Virus record (IMG/VR): IMGVR_UViG_3300037725_000018
Coordinates: 62,001 to 126,000 of that record
DNA: 64,000 bases
Reading direction: 5' to 3' (one strand)
This document shows, in pieces, positions 5,133-63,743 of the stretch. The notes below the pieces were generated by a model. The model did no database searches. It saw only the letters and a program-made list of their open reading frames with translations, and was not told the origin of the DNA. Positions within the stretch are counted from its first letter, which is position 1. Every line of letters starts with the position of its first letter. The position numbers and the translations under genes were made by a program.

Positions 5133-7013
5133 TTATTTAGCACTTCCCTTTATATCTCGATCCGGAAACTTGATTTCGAAAACTGAAGGATCTAAAGAGG
5201 GATAAATGATATTGTCTTTTGTTGCCGATTCAATGTCGTATATATTGTCTGAGTAGTCGTCTCCAGTCTTGTTTGTAATTTCAAACCTCGAAACGTTTTG
5301 AACTCCGTCAATTTCGTTAAGCTCCCGGATCACTTGGCCGATAATGATCGGCTCTGCAAACCCTTGATTGTCTATGTCAAACAGGTCTCGAAGCTTCGCT
5401 AAACAACGGGCAAGAACTTGGTTTTTGTTATACGTAGAAAAAACCAAAACCTCAAAATTTATGCCAATATTGACCACGAACCCGTCTTTGATGTTCACCG
5501 CGTCTGTAAGCATCCGGAACTGCCGAAGGTAATTTTTCAAGTTCTGTTTGGTTGCGTCGTTTACAGGAGTAAGTTTTTTGTTATCGTCGTATCCTAAGAC
5601 GTAAAGGTTAATTGCAAGCGGGTTTTCCTCTGTTCGGTTTGTAGATCCGGTTTGAACTTCGTCGTTTGTCACATACGCCTTTGCCACCGAACCGTACCTG
5701 CTTGGCATGTTTAGGCTTCGAACCACGTAGTCTTCTTTTGTCACCGCCCGGTCTTGTGCAGAGAAAAAAGCCCGTGCGTTATTTTTGATTTCTTGAACGG
5801 ACTCCGGACCTCTACCTCCTGTTGCCGGAATCGGGTTTTGAACACTTAGGCTGTCTTGAACGTCTTGGACTTGCTGCTGTTTTGTTGAAGACAGAGCTTC
5901 AAAGTCTTGAACGTCAAAATCCACTTGGTCAACAACCGTCAAATCGCTTTTAGGAACGTTAGAGGACGCTCCACCTCCAGACGAATACTGGACCGTAAGC
6001 GTTGTGTTGTAAGGAACTTGTCCGTATGTATTCGTTTGAAGAAAGTTTGACGGGTCAAGCGGTTCTTCAAGCTGCTGTTCGGGAGTAAGAACCGGGTTTC
6101 CGATGTTTTGTGGGTTTGGAACGATTTCTTCGTTTGGTTTGTCCGAAGCTCCGGAGCCAAACTGAAGAAACACGTCTCCGCTTCTGTCTACTCTTTGGAT
6201 GAATCTTCTTGGGGTTCTTTCAAGTTTCAAAAGAGAACGAACGTCAACGTCGTCTGTGAAGTTCGGGTCAGTAACGTTTGTGTTCTTAAACTCTTGAAAC
6301 GTTGTTTCTTGTGCTAGATACGGCACTTCAAACCAACGGTTTCCATCCGAATCGGTCACTTCAAGAATGTCAATGAAATCGTCGTCTCGAATGAAAATCT
6401 TTTGATACGGCTCTGGAGAACCAAAATCAAATGTTCGCGTCCGAATTTCACCTGCAACAGCCGGAACCGTTTTTGAAAGCAAGTATTGAGTCGGTTCCCC
6501 GGAAATGTCCCGATTGAAAATTTCAACGTTCAAAGGGTCGTCAAACCGATCAATGGTAAAGTCTACTTCTCTTGTTGTCCGAAACGTAACGTCAGGGTTG
6601 CTTGAACTTGTAACGGTCATTCCCTGCTCGATTGTAGGAACCACCGAAAAGTCCGGTTCAAGTTCTCCGGTTTGGCTGTTGTTTCGAACGGGTGCGACAA
6701 CAAAAACTTCAATCTCTGTTTGTGCGGGTCTGTTTTGTTTGGGAGTATACCCAAGGACTTGCGCTAAGTCCCGGACGTTCTCTTCTTCTTCAGCGTATTG
6801 AATTAAGTTCTCTCTAAACTGCTGGTCTGTGTAGTAGGAAAGAACGTCACCAACATAAGATGAAAGCTCGATAAAGACATTTCCGATGCTTTCTTCGGAG
6901 AAGTCTTGATACGTCTCCGGGAAGTACGTCTTCGTAAATTCGATTAAACCGTCTTTGATTGAATCAAAGTCGCGGTTGAGATATCGAATGTCTTTTGAAT
7001 TTTCGTTGGGCAT
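5133..7013 (-). CDS. Baseplate wedge subunit (T4 gp6 / baseplate J-like)
   Basis: YLNRDFDSIK..L, DFSE.S.G..FIEL.SYVGDVLSYY, FGSG, GG.GPES..EIK.NA and QDRAVTKEDY motifs. Confidence 0.9.
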   Translation of the reverse strand: MPNENSKDIRYLNRDFDSIKDGLIEFTKTYFPETYQDFSEESIGNVFIELSSYVGDVLSYYTDQQFRENLIQYAEEEENVRDLAQVLGYTPKQNRPAQTEIEVFVVAPVRNNSQTGELEPDFSVVPTIEQGMTVTSSSNPDVTFRTTREVDFTIDRFDDPLNVEIFNRDISGEPTQYLLSKTVPAVAGEIRTRTFDFGSPEPYQKIFIRDDDFIDILEVTDSDGNRWFEVPYLAQETTFQEFKNTNVTDPNFTDDVDVRSLLKLERTPRRFIQRVDRSGDVFLQFGSGASDKPNEEIVPNPQNIGNPVLTPEQQLEEPLDPSNFLQTNTYGQVPYNTTLTVQYSSGGGASSNVPKSDLTVVDQVDFDVQDFEALSSTKQQQVQDVQDSLSVQNPIPATGGRGPESVQEIKNNARAFFSAQDRAVTKEDYVVRSLNMPSRYGSVAKAYVTNDEVQTGSTNRTEENPLAINLYVLGYDDNKKLTPVNDATKQNLKNYLRQFRMLTDAVNIKDGFVVNIGINFEVLVFSTYNKNQVLARCLAKLRDLFDIDNQGFAEPIIIGQVIRELNEIDGVQNVSRFEITNKTGDDYSDNIYDIESATKDNIIYPSLDPSVFEIKFPDRDIKGSAK

Positions 7014-17210: not shown

Positions 17211-17250
17211 TGGACCCGGTAGGACTTGAACCTACGACCTTCGTGTTATG
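17211..17250 (-). pseudogene. 3' half of a split resident tRNA(CAT), probably Ile2
   Basis: CATAA-CACGA-AGGTC-GTAGG-TTCAAGT-CCTAC-CGGGTCC-A; truncated at the anticodon. Confidence 0.85.
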
Positions 17251-17297
17251 TAACTTTTCATAGGTCCAATGATATATATTAAAAAAGGGATAACATA

Positions 17298-17828
17298 ATG
17301 AAAAATAGAAACAATTATGAAGTTCAAAAAAAACGTGCGAAGTACCGTAAAATGATGCTTATTGAAAAAGCGGGTGGCGAGTGTAAAAAGTGTGGATATA
17401 GTAAAAACATAGCAGCACTTGATTTTCACCACACTAAAGATAAGAAATTTAGATTAGACTCCAGACACCTTTCTAATTCATCTTGGGATAGAATTTTAAG
17501 AGAGTTTGAAAAGTGTATTTTACTATGTGCAAACTGCCATAGAGAACACCACAACCCGAATTTTACAAAAGATAAAGTAAAATTGGAGTTAGACGAAACC
17601 TACAATCCAAAAAAGTCCACTGAAAATAGATGTTCCGAATGTGGCACTATAATATCATCTAAAGCTAAAATGTGTGTTCCATGTTTTCGTAAAAGTCGTG
17701 AAAAAATCAAATGGCCGGAAACATCTTGGTTAGAAGAAAAAGCTTTAGAATATTCTTTTTCTGCTTTATCAAGACGTTTGGGGGTTTCCGGTAACGCAAT
17801 TCGTAAACGAATTAAAAATCATAAATAA
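17298..17828 (+). CDS. HNH homing endonuclease
   Basis: CKKCG..LDFHH..CILLCANCHREHH, a second CxxC/CxxC zinc finger and a C-terminal HTH; AT-rich; the only clear plus-strand gene. Confidence 0.85.
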   Translation: MKNRNNYEVQKKRAKYRKMMLIEKAGGECKKCGYSKNIAALDFHHTKDKKFRLDSRHLSNSSWDRILREFEKCILLCANCHREHHNPNFTKDKVKLELDETYNPKKSTENRCSECGTIISSKAKMCVPCFRKSREKIKWPETSWLEEKALEYSFSALSRRLGVSGNAIRKRIKNHK

Positions 17829-17837
17829 TCTTCGTCG

Positions 17838-17909
17838 TTGGCCCGATGGGATTCGAACCCATAACCAGTCGCTTATGAGGCGAACGCTCAACCATTGAGC
17901 TACGGGCCA
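17838..17909 (-). tRNA. tRNA(CAT), Ile2 or Met
   Basis: Cloverleaf TGGCCCG/CGGGCCA, loop CTCATAA, TTCGAAT T-loop. Confidence 0.85.
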
Positions 17910-18174
17910 AAATGTATATGCTACGGGTCCTTTCGCTACTTTATGTATTCGACAAATTCAAAAACCGTGCTTGAAGATTTTGCCTTTTCAATCAAACCGG
18001 GAAGGCTGTTTGTATCGTCAACCCGTGTCCAATCGGTCTTTTCCTCTTGACCTTTGTTAGACACTCCAACCCAAGTTGTTCCCATGTTTGTTGAAACTCC
18101 TGTGCAACTACCCGGTGGCTTCTGGCAAGGAGACGTTCCGATCTTTATCGTTCCATCGCTTTTTTCGAAGATTC

Positions 18175-27419: not shown

Positions 27420-27557
27420 AGATTGCCAATTTTAACGCCTTATTTGGCGAATGCGTTTAAGTGTTTTCTTCACCTTTAAAAGAACTTTCAATCAAGTCCT
27501 TCTTGGAATCGAACCAAGGTATCCGTATATTTAAGGATAAATTGCTGTAGGCAATCT
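27420..27557 (-). ncRNA. ACAGCA-motif RNA 1 (Y-RNA-like, degenerate permuted tRNA domain)
   Basis: Stem AGATTGCC/GGCAATCT, TACAGCAA, T-arm CTTGG-TTCGATT-CCAAG followed by a closed acceptor-like hairpin. Confidence 0.7.
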
Positions 27558-27559
27558 TG

Positions 27560-28018: not shown

Positions 28019-28023
28019 AAAAC

Positions 28024-28139
28024 AGGCTACACAAGAAAAGTGTGCTACCATTACACCATACGGGTTAAACCCGCACTTGGATTCGAACCAAGACCTTCTG
28101 CTTATAGGCAGATAAAAGTATGTCTGCTGCAGGTAGCCC
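28024..28139 (-). ncRNA. ACAGCA-motif RNA 3 (circularly permuted tRNA-like domain)
   Basis: Stem GGGCTAC/GTAGCCT, CTGCAGCAG, anticodon-like hairpin, T-arm, acceptor TGCGGG/CCCGTA closed by TTTAA, D-arm GTGTAATGGTAGCAC. Confidence 0.8.
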
Positions 28140-29641: not shown

Positions 29642-29708
29642 ATAAGTCAAGGGTGACTCTACCAAAGTCCATTTAATCGGCAACTTACCGACCCTTGAAA
29701 AATAAAAC

Positions 29709-29829
29709 AGACTGCAATTGATTTAGTGCTCTGCCAGTTGAGCTACCCGTCCAAAAGCGGACGGGGTAGGACTCGAACCTACAACCTCTCCTTCCATGTA
29801 GGATATCAATGGATTGCTGTATGCAGCCT
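29709..29829 (-). ncRNA. ACAGCA-motif RNA 4 (circularly permuted tRNA-like domain)
   Basis: Stem AGGCTGCA/TGCAGTCT, TACAGCAA, T-arm GTAGG-TTCGAGT-CCTAC, acceptor CCCGTCC/GGACGGG closed by GCTTTT, then TA-GCTC-AACTGGCA-GAGC D-arm. Confidence 0.85.
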
Positions 29830-29902
29830 TGGAAATCAACATTTCTTTTTTATCTTGGCACTATTATATATGCTCTATCTATGTAAATGTTTCAAGTTTC
29901 CC

Positions 29903-35091: not shown

Positions 35092-35166
35092 AGCCGTGTG
35101 AGGGATTTGAACCCCCGGCATGCTCATTACAAGTGAGCTGCTCTGGCCAGACTGAGCTAACACGGC
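35092..35166 (-). tRNA. tRNA-Thr(TGT)
   Basis: Cloverleaf, loop CTTGTAA. Confidence 0.92.
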
Positions 35167-35288
35167 GTGTTTGCGGGATTCGAACCCGCGATTCCTTTTC
35201 AGGCTGGTTTCCCGGCACCGCTTTGTTTTGCTATACCGAACACCGTCATGTCCGGTTTGCCTTCTACGTAGAAAACAACTTTCACATT

Positions 35289-35702: not shown

Positions 35703-35856
35703 GAGAATGTTGCATCCACCACCTTAGCGGGATTCGAACCCGCGACTACCGCAATCTAGCGCGGCACTCTGACCTACCTGAGTTATAAGGTGTCACCAAC
35801 GGCGGTGGGATTCGAACCCACAGATACCGATCAAGCACCGTTACAGCAACATTCTC
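35703..35856 (-). ncRNA. Double tRNA-like RNA enclosed in an 11-bp stem
   Basis: GAGAATGTTGC/GCAACATTCTC encloses an anticodon-less mini-tRNA and a cloverleaf (35719-35792) with a 6-nt loop. Confidence 0.7.
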
Positions 35857-36480: not shown

Positions 36481-36651
36481 TTGACAAGCGGTGTGCTTTT
36501 ACGCCAAATCGCGAGAGTATTAATCACAGGACGCCTTACCAGTTACGGGGTGCGCTCTCACTTCGTTGACAGCCATCTATTTTCACATACGCGGTCAACG
36601 GCGAACTCTTTAAAGGATGGATGCTTCTAATCCCACCTTCCGCTTTGTCAA
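36481..36651 (-). ncRNA. 23S rRNA H43/H44 (L11-binding domain) mimic RNA
   Basis: GGTGGGA-TTAGAAGCA-TCCATCC-TTTAAAGAGT...GCGTAAAAGC-ACAC closed by TTGACAA..GCGG/CCGC-TTGTCAA. Confidence 0.75.
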
Positions 36652-44188: not shown

Positions 44189-44701
44189 TTAGTGAAACAC
44201 ATATGGCTTCCAAGATTCATCTAATGTACCCATATTTTTGAAGATCGAGAAGTATGTTGGTCGGTAAATATCCAAGTCCTCTTTTCCGGTTCCAAGAATA
44301 TCTTCGACCTCCGAAAGCGGCTTGTCTCCTTTCGTTTGGTTGCAACTTTTGCAAGCGGTCACAAGATTTTTCCACGTGTTCTTTCCACCTTTACTTTTTG
44401 GTTTGACGTGATCTAGCGTAAGATTATCTTCACTTCCGCAGTACACGCACTCGTGATTATCTCGCTTGTAAATGTTTGAGCGGGTAAGGCTTACGTTGCC
44501 TCGGGGACGCTGCACGTACTGTTCAATCACCCGGACAATGGAAGGGGCATAAATTTCTGTAGATGGAGAGCGAAGAACCGTGTTTTCATAGCGGTTGATA
44601 ACTTCTACCCGGTTTTTAAACTCCAACGTAAATCCTCTCTCAATAGGAACAACGTAAAGTGGTGTGTAATCTTTATTTAGAACAAGTGTCTGCTTATTCA
44701 T
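44189..44701 (-). CDS. HNH endonuclease (McrA-like HNH family)
   Basis: LVLNKDYTPL, RD..CVYCG, LTLDHVKPKSKGG..W.NLVTAC..CN..K. Confidence 0.92.
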   Translation of the reverse strand: MNKQTLVLNKDYTPLYVVPIERGFTLEFKNRVEVINRYENTVLRSPSTEIYAPSIVRVIEQYVQRPRGNVSLTRSNIYKRDNHECVYCGSEDNLTLDHVKPKSKGGKNTWKNLVTACKSCNQTKGDKPLSEVEDILGTGKEDLDIYRPTYFSIFKNMGTLDESWKPYVFH

Positions 44702-45147: not shown

Positions 45148-45817
45148 TTTCGTTTCTATTCTTCTTGTGTGTGCTTTGAGCAACCAAATTCGCTCCCGTC
45201 TTCTCCTGCTGGAGGGTTGAACGGGTACTTCAGACCTCCAAACTCTTGCGAAAGTTCTTTGTTCCCGCAAAGAGGAACGCCTTCTTGAACTTCAAAGAAA
45301 ACGCATGTTTCGCATGTATCGTTCATAGCAAACTCACCTTTTGACTTTTGATTCATTGATTAGCTATTCTTCATCCCAATACTTTTCCGTGAACTCTTTG
45401 AACTCTTCTTTGTCCTCTTCCCAATCCCCGCTCCAGTTTGGAAATACTTTTTGAAAGCCAATGTATCCTAAACGGGAACGAAGCTTTTCGTACTCTACTT
45501 CAAGAGTTTTTTCTTCATCGACCGGAACCAAACTTGAATGTGAAATAAGTCTTTCCACAGACCCGGCAGAAGACTTCGTTCTTCCGGTTTCAACGTTTTG
45601 CAAGATGTATCGCTTCAAAGTTATTGTTTCCCCGGCTTTTGATCCACGTCTTGCCTCTTTCTTCGTTTCTTGAACGTGAACTTCATATACTCTTTCTCCG
45701 TCTGTAAACCTATCTCCAACCTCGATCATAACAGTTTTTTGTTTTATGTTCGTCAATTATAAACGGTCTGAATTGTACCATTGTTTTTCATGTAACCGAA
45801 AAGTTAACGATGAAAAA

Positions 45818-45860
45818 GGTAGCCCCGGTGGGGATCGAACCCACACTGAACAGTTTTTAA
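45818..45860 (-). pseudogene. 3' half of a split resident tRNA-Leu(TAA)
   Basis: T-TAA-AA-ACTGT-TCAGT-GTGGG-TTCGATC-CCCAC-CGGGGCT-ACC. Confidence 0.85.
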
Positions 45861-45949
45861 TGGTACTCCCGGAGGGACTCGAACCCCCAATCCATATTTC
45901 AGGCGTCTGATCTTAAGTCAGAAGTGTATTCCAATTCCACCACGGGAGC
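45861..45949 (-). tRNA. tRNA-Leu(TAA)
   Basis: Class II cloverleaf, TCTGA-CTTAAGA-TCAGA, encoded CCA. Confidence 0.92.
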
Positions 45950-45957
45950 ATATACTT

Positions 45958-46572
45958 TTAGTTCATGTTAATGCTGTTTTCATCTATCAAACGTTTACAT
46001 CTATAATAATTTCCACCTTTCGCTGCTAATCCTACTTCTAACAATGCCTGTCTTATATTATCGTTTCGTTTCAAAGATGAAATCAATGTTGAATCACTCA
46101 CCTTTTTGCTTCCGGTATTTATATTTCTTCCTCTAAAGTAACTTGTCTGTGAATGGCAGTTGGGACAGAGAAGTCTCAAATTTTCAACACGGTGGTCTAG
46201 GCTATTGCCGTTTATGTGATCTATTTCTAAAGTTATGGGTTTTCCATTCCATGTATCCGATAAACCGCACTCATAACACTTTTCTTTCAAAATGCCTTTT
46301 TTTAATGCAAATTTTTTAACATACGCTCCCGGAAGATTAGAGTTCTTTTGAAAAACTTCTTCCTTTGATTTCAGCAGTTTTCCTTTTGACCAATCTCTTT
46401 TGCCATCAAAGTGAGAAAGGTCTTTTTTTCCCTCTTCATAAGCTTTTTTCAGACCATTGCTATTCTTCTTTTTAACTTATGGACACTTTTGATATGTTTC
46501 TTCGCAACATTTTTTTCCATTACTTAAAACATACCTTGCTTCTCTATCGCAACCATAATCGCACTTATTCAT
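45958..46572 (-). pseudogene. HNH homing endonuclease with premature in-frame TAA at codon 32
   Basis: ATG at 46572 (MNKCDYGC...KCP*VKKK) is in frame with CYECG..LEIDHINGNSLDHRVENLRLLCPNCH; TAA at 46477-46479. Confidence 0.8.
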
Positions 46573-46631
46573 TATACCTACTTTTTTAATTCATTCGCGG
46601 ATATATAGTAGGTATACGAAAGTTTTAATGG

Positions 46632-46664
46632 TTAAACTGCCTCTTCCGGTTGGGCTACAGGGCC
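46632..46664 (-). pseudogene. 5' half of the split tRNA-Leu(TAA)
   Basis: GGCCCTG-TA-GCCCAACCGGAAGAGGCAGTTT; GGCCCTG pairs with CGGGGCT and GCAGT with ACTGT of the 3' half. Confidence 0.8.
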
Positions 46665-46902
46665 GTAAAAATTATTCGAGAGTATGACTTCCACTTCCGG
46701 TAGAAAAGTAAACAAGTTCTCGGACTGAAAAAGGTTTGATTTCTATGTCAAACCGATCATCCCAATCTTCAACGTACCAGCACTTCCTATAAAGAGTGTT
46801 TAAAATCGCATCAGAGTTCGGACCGGATGTTAAAAGAGGTTTGTTAACTTCGGCCTTAAACGCTTCCTCAGAATCTTCGATTATAACAAGCATAGGTGGT
46901 TT

Positions 46903-63280: not shown

Positions 63281-63329
63281 AGAATATAGACATTAATATT
63301 TGAATTGAAAACAGATAAAAATTTTATAG

Positions 63330-63743
63330 TGGACCCGGCGGGATTCGAACCCGCGTCCGCAGCACCTTTGCAACATCGGTTGTCACAGTCTTAGAATGGT
63401 CTTTATTTTTGACCGACAGACTATTGTATTAGACCACACAAAAGTTTGTGGGTTTTATTTCAACCCGCTATCGGACTTGTTTTACGTTCTGCCTACCAAG
63501 CAAAACAAGTTGAAGCCCAGTAGGAATATCCGATGGTGTGTGCCTTACTCTCTATCGGAGTCGAGAAGTAAGGCTGCAGTTACGCCGCAAGAGAAGCGCC
63601 GAAGTGCTCCTCCATGTTGACGCCTGCAGGAACGCGGTTAACGTTGCCAAGTATTGATTCCGTCAGTTATTTTATGCCCACCTAACGGTAAGGGCAGACT
63701 GCCGACCTTGCTCCGCGTGCTACGTCGAAGCCGTGTCAGGCCC
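63330..63743 (-). ncRNA. ssrA: tmRNA
   Basis: 5' GGGCCTGACACGGCTTCGAC, 3' GGACGCGGGTTCGAATCCCGCCGGGTCCA, G3:U70; tag frame 63648-63580 GNVNRVPAGVNMEEHFGASLAA*. Confidence 0.92.

What the first reader, a model, noticed from the sequence alone, without database searches (positions are those of the whole stretch)
45818..46664. HNH cassette 2: splits tRNA-Leu(UAA) at the anticodon loop and supplies a different tRNA-Leu(UAA)
Seen, in tRNA sense: 5' half (46664-46632), HNH gene, intact class II tRNA-Leu(TAA), whose CCA directly abuts the resident 3' half beginning T-TAA-AA. The halves pair in the acceptor and anticodon stems. The resident was a short-variable-arm type and its 5' half appears to have lost one GCA unit. 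A 10-bp repeat TTTTAATGGT marks both junctions. A different HNH, a different gene order and a different tRNA from cassette 1 suggest a repeated strategy rather than an accident: anticodon-matched tRNA replacement by homing elements.
Basis: partly seen in the sequence, partly recalled or inferred. Interest (0 to 1): 0.85.

Follow-up and report, generated by a model that had tools for sequence, protein, structure and literature searches.

The report
Homing endonuclease carrying a spare tRNA
A selfish nuclease gene sits inside a phage tRNA-Leu(UAA) gene that it has broken in two, and it brings an intact tRNA with the same anticodon, so the damage costs the phage nothing; this does at the DNA level what a self-splicing intron does at the RNA level.

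Summary
In tRNA sense (minus strand) the order is: 5' remnant of a short-arm tRNA (46664-46638), a promoter-like element and a hairpin over the start codon, an HNH gene (46572-45958, one in-frame TAA at 46479-46477), an intact 89-nt class II tRNA-Leu(UAA) (45949-45861), then the resident's 3' half from U33 (45860-45818). There is no intron ribozyme.

Relatives decide the reading. L209/L210 (about 92% identical) and L004 (a more distant syntenic phage) have the same nested layout with an intact HNH. L004's halves join into a perfect 75-nt tRNA(UAA). Each lineage carries different lesions in the resident, so it is a decaying pseudogene, not a split functional tRNA.

The HNH family lives in phage tRNA arrays. 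Its closest members sit directly upstream of a tRNA(UAA) gene, or inside or next to group I introns at U34/A35 of such genes. The same nested layout recurs with class II residents in L237 and L138.

Best reading: an HNH-plus-tRNA(UAA) pair inserted into its own target. The anticodon match follows from the link between nuclease and target. The 10-bp repeat is real but is not a target-site duplication. No empty site was found and no cleavage was tested. I rate this a new variant of free-standing homing.

The parts
46638..46664 (-). 5' remnant of the resident short-variable-arm tRNA(UAA): acceptor 5' strand, D arm and position 26. The anticodon-stem 5' strand is missing.
   Evidence: Sequence. 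Pairs 7/7 with the acceptor strand at 45827-45821. 89% identical to the complete 5' half in L004 and lacks 6 nt relative to it. The D arm is nearly identical to intron-containing class I tRNA(UAA) genes in L178 and L135.
46601..46637 (-). Upstream element belonging to the cassette: a TTTAAC..TTAAAAC..TACC motif followed by a TATATAT box that resembles a T4-type late promoter. It contains the left copy of the 10-bp repeat (46632-46623).
   Evidence: Homologous elements lie upstream of the HNH start in L209, L004, L005 and L129-L133, whether nested or not. In several the box reads TATAAATA. Promoter function is inferred, not tested.
46573..46616 (-). Hairpin whose 3' arm abuts the HNH start codon. 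It probably occludes the ribosome-binding region.
   Evidence: Inverted repeat of 10/10 nt with a 24-nt loop. RNA fold -13.8 kcal/mol, z = -3.0. L004 has a different sequence with the same structure, -19.2 kcal/mol, z = -2.8.
45958..46572 (-). HNH homing-endonuclease gene, 204 codons, interrupted by one in-frame TAA at 46479-46477 (codon 32).
   Evidence: Translation. Pfam PF01844 and phrog_10822. All family-invariant residues are present. L209/L210 have Ser (TCT) at codon 32 and an intact 204-aa ORF. dN/dS against L209 is 0.07.
45861..45949 (-). Cargo: an intact class II tRNA-Leu(UAA) with encoded CCA. It is the only tRNA(UAA) in the window.
   Evidence: ARAGORN. Rfam tRNA 51.2 bits, full length. 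95% identical in L209, with a compensatory pair change in the anticodon stem.
45818..45860 (-). 3' half of the resident tRNA(UAA): loop from U33 (TTAAAA), anticodon-stem 3' strand, 5-nt variable loop, T arm, acceptor 3' strand, discriminator A, CC.
   Evidence: Orphan T arm not called by ARAGORN. 91% identical to the L004 3' half. The L004 halves join into a perfect cloverleaf.
45855..45864 (-). Right copy of the 10-bp repeat: the last four bases of the cargo tRNA (ACCA) plus the first six bases of the resident loop (TTAAAA).
   Evidence: These 10 nt are absent in L209/L210.

Best explanation
A free-standing HNH homing-endonuclease gene travels as a pair with a downstream tRNA(UAA) gene and has its own promoter-like element and a start-codon hairpin. 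In an ancestor of this phage, L209/L210 and L004, that pair inserted into the anticodon loop (around U33-A35) of a resident short-arm tRNA(UAA) gene.

That loop is the likely cleavage site of this HNH subfamily. It is also the site where related phage tRNA(UAA) genes carry group I introns. The insertion has three effects:
- It destroys the recognition site, which gives self-immunity.
- It kills the resident tRNA.
- It supplies a tRNA with the same anticodon, so the phage keeps UUA/UUG decoding.

The two resident halves then act as homology arms for ordinary homing into any phage with an intact resident-type gene. After fixation the resident decays, and in this window the nuclease gene has recently picked up a stop codon.

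**Shown:** the anatomy, conservation of the nested layout, independent lesions in the resident, absence of a ribozyme, family linkage to tRNA(UAA) genes, and recurrence in other phages.

**Inferred:** the cleavage specificity, the original illegitimate insertion event, immunity of the cargo allele, and spread by homing.
For: **Anatomy.**

**The same nested layout in relatives.**
- L004: HNH 66% identical and intact. The cargo is a different, 75-nt class I tRNA(UAA). The halves are complete and join into a perfect cloverleaf.
- L209/L210: the HNH ORF is intact at 204 aa.
- W, L209 and L004 form one starred clade on the HNH tree.

**Different lesions in each lineage.**
- W and L209 lack the anticodon-stem 5' strand.
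- L209 also has a 2-nt D-loop deletion and has lost the 10 nt that include the resident loop.
- W alone has the HNH stop codon.

**Selection on the nuclease.** dN/dS for W against L209 is 0.07.

**Link between the family and tRNA genes.**
- 77 of 80 IMG/VR loci holding homologues carry tRNAs within 2.5 kb.
- At least 8 of the 12 closest adjoin a tRNA(UAA) gene.
- Every context fetched through the protein database does too: L004, L005, L209, L237, L238 and L239.

**The same site carries introns.**
- Group I introns sit at U34/A35 of phage tRNA(UAA) genes next to these HNH genes (L130, L132, L135, L178).
- In L163 and L167 the intron contains an HNH gene.
- In-silico splicing gives tRNA-Leu(taa) in all 8 cases tried.

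**Recurrence with class II residents.** The nested pair is found again in L237 and L138.

**Target core.** All 8 assessable interrupted genes share a GA-CTT|AAAA-TC core. Only 2 of 10 uninterrupted cargo or adjacent tRNAs have it.

**Not an assembly artefact.** The window sequence recurs 100% identical in a second sample.
Against: - No relative with an uninterrupted resident gene at this locus was found, so the insertion is inferred, not observed.
- No cleavage data exist for any member of this family.
- The window's own HNH is broken, so the element may be immobile here.
- W and L004 carry different cargo tRNAs within otherwise alignable junctions. That requires a later exchange of the pair or of the tRNA, which I cannot reconstruct.
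- The halves are about 90% identical between W and L004, against 78% for neighbouring coding DNA. L209 also has a compensatory change in the resident T stem. Both could mean the 3' half keeps some role.
- The core-motif contrast is not corrected for relatedness. It could reflect the intron's own exon-pairing needs rather than nuclease recognition.
Confidence: 0.75

Rival explanations
1. Degenerate intron. The HNH was once encoded in a group I intron at U34/A35 of the resident tRNA. The ribozyme was later lost, and a replacement tRNA was captured inside the dead intron.
For: - Homologous HNH genes do sit inside group I introns at exactly this site in L163 and L167.
- Introns at this site are common next to the family.
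- The resident's D arm matches intron-containing class I tRNA(UAA) genes.
Against: - No ribozyme remnant is detected even at E <= 10 in the window or E <= 0.01 in L004.
- Only about 65 nt and 8 nt of non-ORF, non-tRNA sequence remain inside the insertion.
- The unit of upstream element, HNH and tRNA(UAA) is conserved in non-nested homologues (L005, L129), so the pair existed before nesting.
- The intron-encoded homologues fall in the other major clade of the tree.
Confidence: 0.1
2. Recombination scar with the HNH as a bystander. Illegitimate recombination or duplication and deletion within a dense tRNA array left two tRNA fragments around an unrelated HNH-tRNA pair. The nuclease did not cut the resident.
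For: - The window and related arrays hold many other orphan tRNA pieces, so tRNA debris is common here.
- No cleavage data exist.
Against: - The break lies in the anticodon loop within one or two bases of the same position in W, L004, L237 and L138.
- That is the position used by introns associated with this HNH family.
- Resident and cargo share the anticodon in every case.
- A second HNH-tRNA-Met cassette in this window breaks a tRNA-Met-like gene at its anticodon too.
Confidence: 0.1
3. Functional split tRNA. The two halves are still expressed and are brought together, either in trans or by excision of the HNH-tRNA insert using tRNA-processing enzymes and an RNA ligase. They would form a working short-arm tRNA(UAA).
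For: - The L004 halves are complete and fold into a perfect cloverleaf when joined.
- The halves are conserved about as well as intact tRNAs between W and L004.
- L209 has a compensatory T-stem change.
- RNase P and 3' processing of the cargo tRNA would release the 3' half with a defined 5' end (inference).
Against: - W and L209 lack the 5' strand of the anticodon stem, and L209 lacks the anticodon loop itself.
- The sequences at the two junctions are identical rather than complementary, so no bulge-helix-bulge or pairing leader can form.
- No ribozyme is present.
- Between W and L209 the halves are no better conserved than nearby non-coding DNA.
Confidence: 0.04
4. Chance resemblance or assembly artefact.
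For: - Short AT-rich repeats are frequent in this region. Three unrelated 10-nt repeat families occur in 1.1 kb.
Against: - The same architecture appears in independent assemblies from at least five samples.
- Acceptor pairing is 7/7 and is followed by a D arm.
- ARAGORN accepts the joined halves.
Confidence: 0.01

Closest known systems
Free-standing homing endonucleases of phage tRNA regions with intronless homing (T4 SegB, PMC2330249; T4-type seg/mob genes, PMC2988022)
   Same: - A nuclease gene lies between or next to tRNA genes.
- It is not in an intron.
- It is thought to cut the corresponding region of phages that lack it and to be copied in together with flanking DNA.
- It shows late-promoter-like and hairpin control of expression, as described for T4 endonuclease genes (my own knowledge of that literature).
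   Different: - SegB is GIY-YIG, not HNH.
- It sits between intact genes and does not split one.
- The replacement of the target is by co-conversion of homologous flanks, not by a complete spare gene nested inside the broken target.
Collaborative or trans homing: a free-standing nuclease that targets an intron insertion site (cyanophage psbA F-CphI, PMC6083498; T4 mobE / I-TevIII, PMC2790892)
   Same: - Close homologues of this HNH lie directly upstream of tRNA(UAA) genes whose group I intron interrupts the same anticodon-loop site (L130, L132, L135).
- This matches the arrangement in which the intron protects the carrier genome and is mobilised by the neighbouring nuclease.
   Different: - In the window there is no intron.
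- Protection and compensation come from the insertion itself plus a spare tRNA.
Group I intron of tRNA-Leu(UAA) between U34 and A35 (cyanobacteria and plastids) and the intron-encoded nuclease specific for the tRNA-fMet anticodon region (cited in PMC3984707)
   Same: - The same gene type and the same site, within one or two bases.
- The insertion is phenotypically neutral for the carrier.
   Different: - Neutrality there comes from RNA self-splicing.
- Here no ribozyme is present (tested) and the interrupted gene decays.
Genes split by a homing-endonuclease gene (Aeromonas phage Aeh1 nrdA/mobE, from my own knowledge; fractured genes with split inteins, PMC2677866)
   Same: A free-standing nuclease gene lies between two halves of a formerly continuous gene.
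   Different: - In those cases the two halves stay functional, as separate subunits or by protein trans-splicing.
- Here the halves are abandoned and function is supplied by a complete cargo copy.
Split and permuted tRNA genes of Nanoarchaeum and Cyanidioschyzon (PMC3978253, PMC4390854)
   Same: tRNA halves are separated at the anticodon loop.
   Different: - Those halves carry complementary leaders and a bulge-helix-bulge motif and are joined by the archaeal/eukaryal splicing machinery.
- None of this is present here, and the halves are damaged.

Membership tests
HNH (beta-beta-alpha-metal) endonuclease | HNH motif with the catalytic His, Asn and His/Asn and flanking Cys pairs | tested here: met
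   Pfam PF01844 scores 28.4 bits against a cut-off of 21.4, and PF13392 26.1 against 24.8. All invariant columns of the family alignment are present in the window copy. The AlphaFold model of the L209 protein (pLDDT 88.7) has only weak Foldseek matches, all to HNH domains such as McrA and Cap5.
HNH (beta-beta-alpha-metal) endonuclease | Intact open reading frame | tested here: not met
   The window copy has TAA at codon 32. L209, L210 and L004 are intact.
Homing endonuclease (mobile, site-specific) | Sequence-specific cleavage of the allele that lacks the gene | not testable with these tools
   Only indirect evidence: the insertion site coincides with the intron site used by related HNH genes and with the conserved core of interrupted genes.
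Homing endonuclease (mobile, site-specific) | Presence/absence polymorphism at a homologous site (empty site) | tested here: inconclusive
   No empty-site relative was found. However, the same cassette type occurs inside non-homologous residents (class I and class II) and free-standing in other phages.
Free-standing (non-intron) endonuclease gene | No self-splicing element around the ORF | tested here: met
   No Intron_gpI or group II match at E <= 10 in 45600-46900, and none in L004 at E <= 0.01. The same search settings detect group I introns in L130, L132, L135, L178 and L207.
Group I intron in tRNA-Leu(UAA) | Ribozyme core plus U at the 5' splice site and G at the intron's 3' end | tested here: not met
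   No core is detected. The base before the 3' half is A (window) or C (L004), not G.
Split tRNA gene (functional halves) | Both halves complete, with complementary flanking sequences or a splicing motif | tested here: not met
   The window and L209 lack the anticodon-stem 5' strand, and L209 lacks the loop. The junction motifs are direct repeats, not complementary.
Integrase-type insertion into a tRNA gene (att duplication) | An integrase gene and a duplicated tRNA 3' segment flanking a large element | tested here: not met
   No integrase lies among the neighbouring ORFs. The insert is 777 bp, and the flanks are complementary halves of one tRNA, not a duplicated 3' end.
Class II bacterial-type tRNA-Leu (cargo) | Cloverleaf with a long variable arm, UAA anticodon, A73 | tested here: met
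   ARAGORN nt, and Rfam gives 51.2 bits over the full model. The sequence shows G37, A73 and CCA. Aminoacylation was not tested.

The most novel reading that the evidence does not exclude
HNH-plus-tRNA pairs may be a general, previously unrecognised class of compensated mobile element. Carrying a resistant spare copy of the gene they destroy would be a third way, besides self-splicing introns and inteins, for a homing endonuclease to colonise a useful gene.

If so, these pairs would be a main driver of turnover, duplication and isoacceptor diversity in phage tRNA arrays, including the many orphan tRNA halves and the short-arm tRNA-Leu genes. A bolder version that is not excluded for L004-type phages is that the retained 3' half still has a role in processing or stabilising the cargo tRNA.
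Probability: 0.3. Interest if true: 0.75.

Novelty: new variant of a known kind. Interest (0 to 1): 0.62.

Why it matters
**A different solution to the insertion problem.** Homing endonucleases are thought to persist in important genes only when an intron or intein removes them from the product, or when they sit harmlessly between genes. This locus shows another way. The element breaks a tRNA gene outright and pays for it with a complete spare tRNA of the same anticodon.

**Three states at one site.** In one protein family and at one target site we can see all three states: intron-encoded, free-standing next to an intron-bearing target, and nested with a spare part. That makes the evolutionary transitions between them directly testable.

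**An explanation for tRNA debris.** It offers a concrete mechanism for the tRNA fragments, duplicated isoacceptors and rapid reshuffling seen in large phage tRNA arrays.

**Phage tRNA introns.** It shows that phage tRNA genes do carry group I introns, some with HNH genes. A 2014 review stated that all phage introns then known were in protein-coding genes (PMC3984707).

Tried and rejected
- **Intron.** The Rfam scan at E <= 10 over the cassette found only the cargo tRNA. ARAGORN in intron mode up to 1500 nt did not call the split gene.
- **Target-site duplication.** Removing the insert plus one repeat copy leaves a 13-16-nt anticodon loop, which is not a tRNA. The left repeat copy is part of a conserved promoter-proximal element, and the right copy is missing in L209.
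- **Empty site.** I searched with exact DNA patterns of both halves in IMG/VR, with both flanking proteins, with a profile of the downstream protein and with a protein-database search. These returned only the window's own contig and relatives that already carry the cassette.
- **Metagenome scan with the T arm and acceptor**. It was still useful for showing that intact resident-like class I tRNA(UAA) genes exist.
- **Named relatives.** Megablast of the region against GenBank phages found no match. A PDB sequence search with the family profile found no match. The single-sequence AlphaFold model was unusable, pLDDT 36.
- **Selection on the halves.** W against L004 suggested conservation. The closer W-L209 comparison shows the halves are no better kept than nearby non-coding DNA, so I do not claim selection.
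- **Automated survey of tRNA followed by an orphan 3' half** across all fetched loci. It mixed real cases with tRNAs that ARAGORN missed, so I did not use it for statistics.

Full report
**1. Source and setting**

The window is part of IMG/VR contig IMGVR_UViG_3300037725_000018, a 223-kb phage genome (100% identity over 12 kb). All genes in the window run on the minus strand. They include 40 tRNA genes and a tmRNA. GC content is 42.6%. An identical copy of the locus, with the same stop codon, occurs in a second sample.

**2. What is at 45818-46664**

Read in tRNA sense, the order is:

| Coordinates | Feature |
|---|---|
| 46664-46638 | 27-nt tRNA 5' piece: acceptor strand, TA, D arm, position 26 |
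| 46637-46573 | 65 nt of non-coding sequence |
| 46572-45958 | 204-codon HNH ORF with a single in-frame TAA at 46479-46477 |
| 45957-45950 | 8-nt spacer |
| 45949-45861 | 89-nt class II tRNA-Leu(UAA) ending in CCA |
| 45860-45818 | 43-nt tRNA 3' half, directly after the CCA |

- The 3' half runs: TTAAAA, a 5-nt stem strand, a 5-nt variable loop, a T arm, an acceptor strand, A, CC.
- The two acceptor strands pair 7/7. The 5' piece is the only such candidate within 3 kb that is followed by a D arm.
- ARAGORN accepts the joined pieces as a tRNA.
- The ORF is an HNH endonuclease by Pfam and PHROGs. The 31-codon piece before the stop matches the family's N-terminal zinc ribbon.
- An Rfam scan at E <= 10 finds nothing but the cargo tRNA, so there is no group I or II ribozyme.

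**3. Relatives with the same layout**

*L004.* The closest HNH homologue (66% identity) lies on L004, a syntenic but diverged phage contig. Neighbouring proteins are 55-94% identical and coding DNA is 78% identical.
- It has the same order: 5' half, HNH (intact), tRNA(UAA), 3' half.
- Its cargo is a different tRNA, a 75-nt short-arm tRNA(UAA).
- Its 5' half is complete. Joined to the 3' half, it gives a perfect 75-nt cloverleaf with loop CTTAAAA.

*L209 and L210.* The downstream protein led to these closer relatives, about 92% identical in the cassette.
- The HNH is an intact 204-aa ORF, with TCT (Ser) where the window has TAA.
- The cargo is the same class II tRNA-Leu.
- The 5' piece has the same 6-nt loss as the window plus a further 2-nt deletion.
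- The 10 nt ACCATTAAAA at the 3' junction are gone, which removes the resident's loop.

*What this shows.*
- The nested arrangement predates the split of these three lineages. Their HNH proteins form one well-supported clade.
- The resident has been collecting independent lesions since then. That is the signature of a pseudogene.
- The nuclease has been under strong purifying selection: dN/dS is 0.07 and dS is 0.34 between the window and L209. The window's stop codon is therefore recent.

**4. The HNH family and its habitat**

The family is very large, with more than 4900 database clusters at E <= 1e-5. I surveyed 80 IMG/VR loci that hold homologues.
- 77 carry tRNA genes within 2.5 kb.
- The nuclease gene typically ends a few bases before a tRNA gene.
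- Among the 12 closest non-self loci, at least 8 adjoin a tRNA(UAA) gene. More distant members adjoin other isoacceptors (Gln, Asn, Ser, Phe and others).
- All further contexts fetched through the protein database adjoin a tRNA(UAA) gene as well: L005/L006, L237, L238 and L239.

The pair of HNH and tRNA(UAA) is therefore the conserved unit.

**5. The same site carries group I introns**

- Next to several close homologues, the tRNA(UAA) gene is interrupted by a group I intron. Rfam RF00028 scores 53-71 bits in L130, L132, L135, L178 and L207.
- In L163 and L167 a homologous HNH gene lies inside such an intron.
- Removing the sequence between U34 and A35 gives an ARAGORN tRNA-Leu(taa) in all eight cases tried, both short-arm and long-arm types.
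- The short-arm intron-bearing genes have a D arm almost identical to the window's resident. L135 has the same anticodon stem as the L004 resident.

The resident therefore belongs to a real tRNA family, and the break lies at a known hot spot for mobile insertions. Intact resident-like genes also occur in metagenomes and in Actinomycetota genome bins.

**6. Recurrence**

| Locus | HNH identity | Layout |
|---|---|---|
| L237 | 53% | Complete nested case: 5' half of a class II tRNA-Leu, the homologous upstream element, HNH, a class II tRNA-Leu(UAA) cargo overlapping the ORF end, then the resident 3' half. Acceptor and anticodon stems pair perfectly. |
| L138 | about 40% | A class II resident broken after CTT, holding a 77-nt short-arm cargo. 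The loop region of the 3' half has decayed. L138 sits apart from the window's clade on the tree. |
| L238, L133 | not determined | Only a 5' fragment is kept upstream of the HNH. |

The window itself has a second cassette at 17212-17930. It consists of an 11-nt 5' fragment, a tRNA-Met(CAU), an unrelated HNH gene on the other strand, and a 3' fragment that starts at CATAA and looks like a tRNA-Met.

In every nested case where the anticodon can be read, resident and cargo agree.

**7. Junctions**

- The sequence just after the 5' piece is homologous to the region upstream of the HNH start in non-nested homologues (L005, L129-L133). It carries a TTTAAC..TTAAAAC..TACC motif and then a TATAAATA-like box, which is the consensus of T4-type late promoters from my own knowledge.
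- A hairpin follows whose 3' arm reaches the start codon. It is conserved in structure but not in sequence between the window and L004, with z-scores near -3.
The right copy is the cargo's ACCA plus the resident's TTAAAA.
- The repeat is exact and unique to these two places in 64 kb. However, two other 10-nt repeats occur by chance in the same 1.1 kb. L004 has only an 8-bp version, and L209 lacks the right copy. It may be a microhomology used at insertion, or a coincidence. It is not a target-site duplication.
- The resident sequence is continuous across the insert to within one or two bases. In L004 the 5' half runs through C32 and perhaps the two Ts, and the 3' half starts at U33. In L237 the break is between U33 and U34.

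**8. How it most likely works**

1. The HNH recognises the anticodon-arm DNA of tRNA(UAA) genes.
2. All eight assessable interrupted genes share the core GA-CTT|AAAA-TC. Only 2 of 10 uninterrupted cargo or adjacent tRNAs have it. This fits a sensitive target allele and resistant companion alleles, though relatedness is not controlled for and the intron's own pairing needs could contribute.
3. The gene normally sits beside a resistant tRNA(UAA).
4. Once, by illegitimate repair of a cut, the whole unit (promoter element, HNH and tRNA) was copied into the break in a sensitive resident gene.
5. From then on the structure behaves like an intron without splicing. It is immune, because the site is destroyed. 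It is harmless, because the same anticodon is supplied. It is flanked by tRNA halves that give homology for homing into intact copies.
6. Repeated homing, or exchange between different pairs in the same resident, would also explain two things. The HNH and cargo differ more between the window and L004 (66% nt) than the background does (78%). The halves differ less (about 90%).

The cleavage, the immunity and the homing are all inferred.

**9. Rivals**

- *Degenerate intron.* This is the most serious alternative. It is disfavoured because the pair exists as a unit outside residents and because no ribozyme trace remains.
- *Functional split tRNA.* This is contradicted by the lesions in the window and in L209.
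- *Bystander HNH.* This is hard to square with the same break point in four lineages and in a second cassette.

**10. Relation to known systems and limits**

The parts are familiar:
- free-standing nucleases in phage tRNA regions (SegB, PMC2330249);
- nucleases aimed at intron insertion sites (PMC2790892, PMC6083498);
- the U34/A35 intron of tRNA-Leu(UAA), and a nuclease specific for a tRNA anticodon region (PMC3984707);
- genes split by nuclease genes (PMC2677866).

Five full-text searches found no description of a nuclease nested in its target together with a complete spare copy. I therefore rate it a new variant of a known kind.

Limits:
- no empty site was found;
- there is no biochemistry;
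- the survey was small and not phylogenetically corrected;
- the window's own copy is probably inactive.

Noticed in passing
It has an 11-nt tRNA 5' fragment (17930-17920), an intact tRNA-Met(CAU) at 17909-17837, an HNH gene on the plus strand at 17298-17828 (phrog_3106 3e-22, no Pfam hit), and a 3' fragment that starts at CATAA. The fragment's T arm and acceptor strand pair perfectly with the 5' fragment. It has the same logic as cassette 2 but an unrelated HNH.
   Followed up: partly
L130, L132, L135, L178, L201, L207, L163, L167 (IMG/VR phage contigs): Group I introns at U34/A35 of phage-encoded tRNA(UAA) genes. Three are 740-780 nt long and contain ORFs, which are HNH homologues in L163 and L167. 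A 2014 review said all phage introns then known were in protein-coding genes (PMC3984707).
   Followed up: partly
window 29700-29830 and 28020-28135: Orphan tRNA pieces in a permuted-looking order. At 29782-29758 a T arm plus acceptor 3' strand is followed after 6 nt by the matching acceptor 5' strand and a Phe-like D arm. At 28134-28069 there is a tRNA-like unit without a D arm, followed by a His-like 5' half. ARAGORN and Rfam do not call them.
   Followed up: partly
window 35797-35850, 35165-35225, 27494-27558; also L005 5780-5820 and 6937-6960, L052, L120: Further orphan T-arm elements, sometimes directly after or before an intact tRNA. Several are preceded by a recurring CAGCAA(T) motif 30-40 nt upstream. 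They may be debris of earlier cassette events or an undescribed tRNA-like RNA family.
   Followed up: no
L129, L137, L138, L199, L004, L005, L238, L239; L013-L121 (metagenomes); L213-L235 (Actinomycetota genome bins): Short-variable-arm (73-78 nt) tRNAs with Leu anticodons, UAA above all, are common in large phage tRNA arrays. They also occur singly in high-GC Actinomycetota chromosomes. Bacterial tRNA-Leu is normally long-armed, so their identity and charging are unknown.
   Followed up: partly
window 44189-44701: Another HNH gene of a different family (PF01844 and HNH_5), lying between tRNA-Leu(CAA) and tRNA-Val(GAC). It is 94% identical to its L004 counterpart, much better conserved than the cassette HNH. 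In L209/L210 only a 75-aa product is called in its place; why was not examined.
   Followed up: no
window 35719-35792: ARAGORN reports a tRNA with an irregular anticodon loop (a two-base anticodon, 'ag'). Rfam scores it as a tRNA at 50.2 bits.
   Followed up: no
window 63329-63743: A full-length tmRNA gene (Rfam 91 bits) with tag peptide ending in ASLAA, encoded by the phage next to a tRNA-Ala.
   Followed up: no
L004 950-1316: About 350 nt of non-coding, GC-richer sequence lies between the resident 3' half and tRNA-Arg(UCU). It has a weak LSU-rRNA-like match (999-1049, E 2e-4) and a 32-nt match to window 36607-36638. It has no counterpart at this position in the window.
   Followed up: no
L021 about 5900-5975 and L060 (metagenome contigs): A tRNA-Arg(UCU)-like gene with an insertion of about 26 nt in the anticodon loop. 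This is too short for a group I intron.
   Followed up: no
L208 and L209 (both from sample 3300038620): The window-type variant (HNH with stop codon) and the L209-type variant (intact HNH, further decayed resident) co-occur in the same metagenome sample.
   Followed up: no
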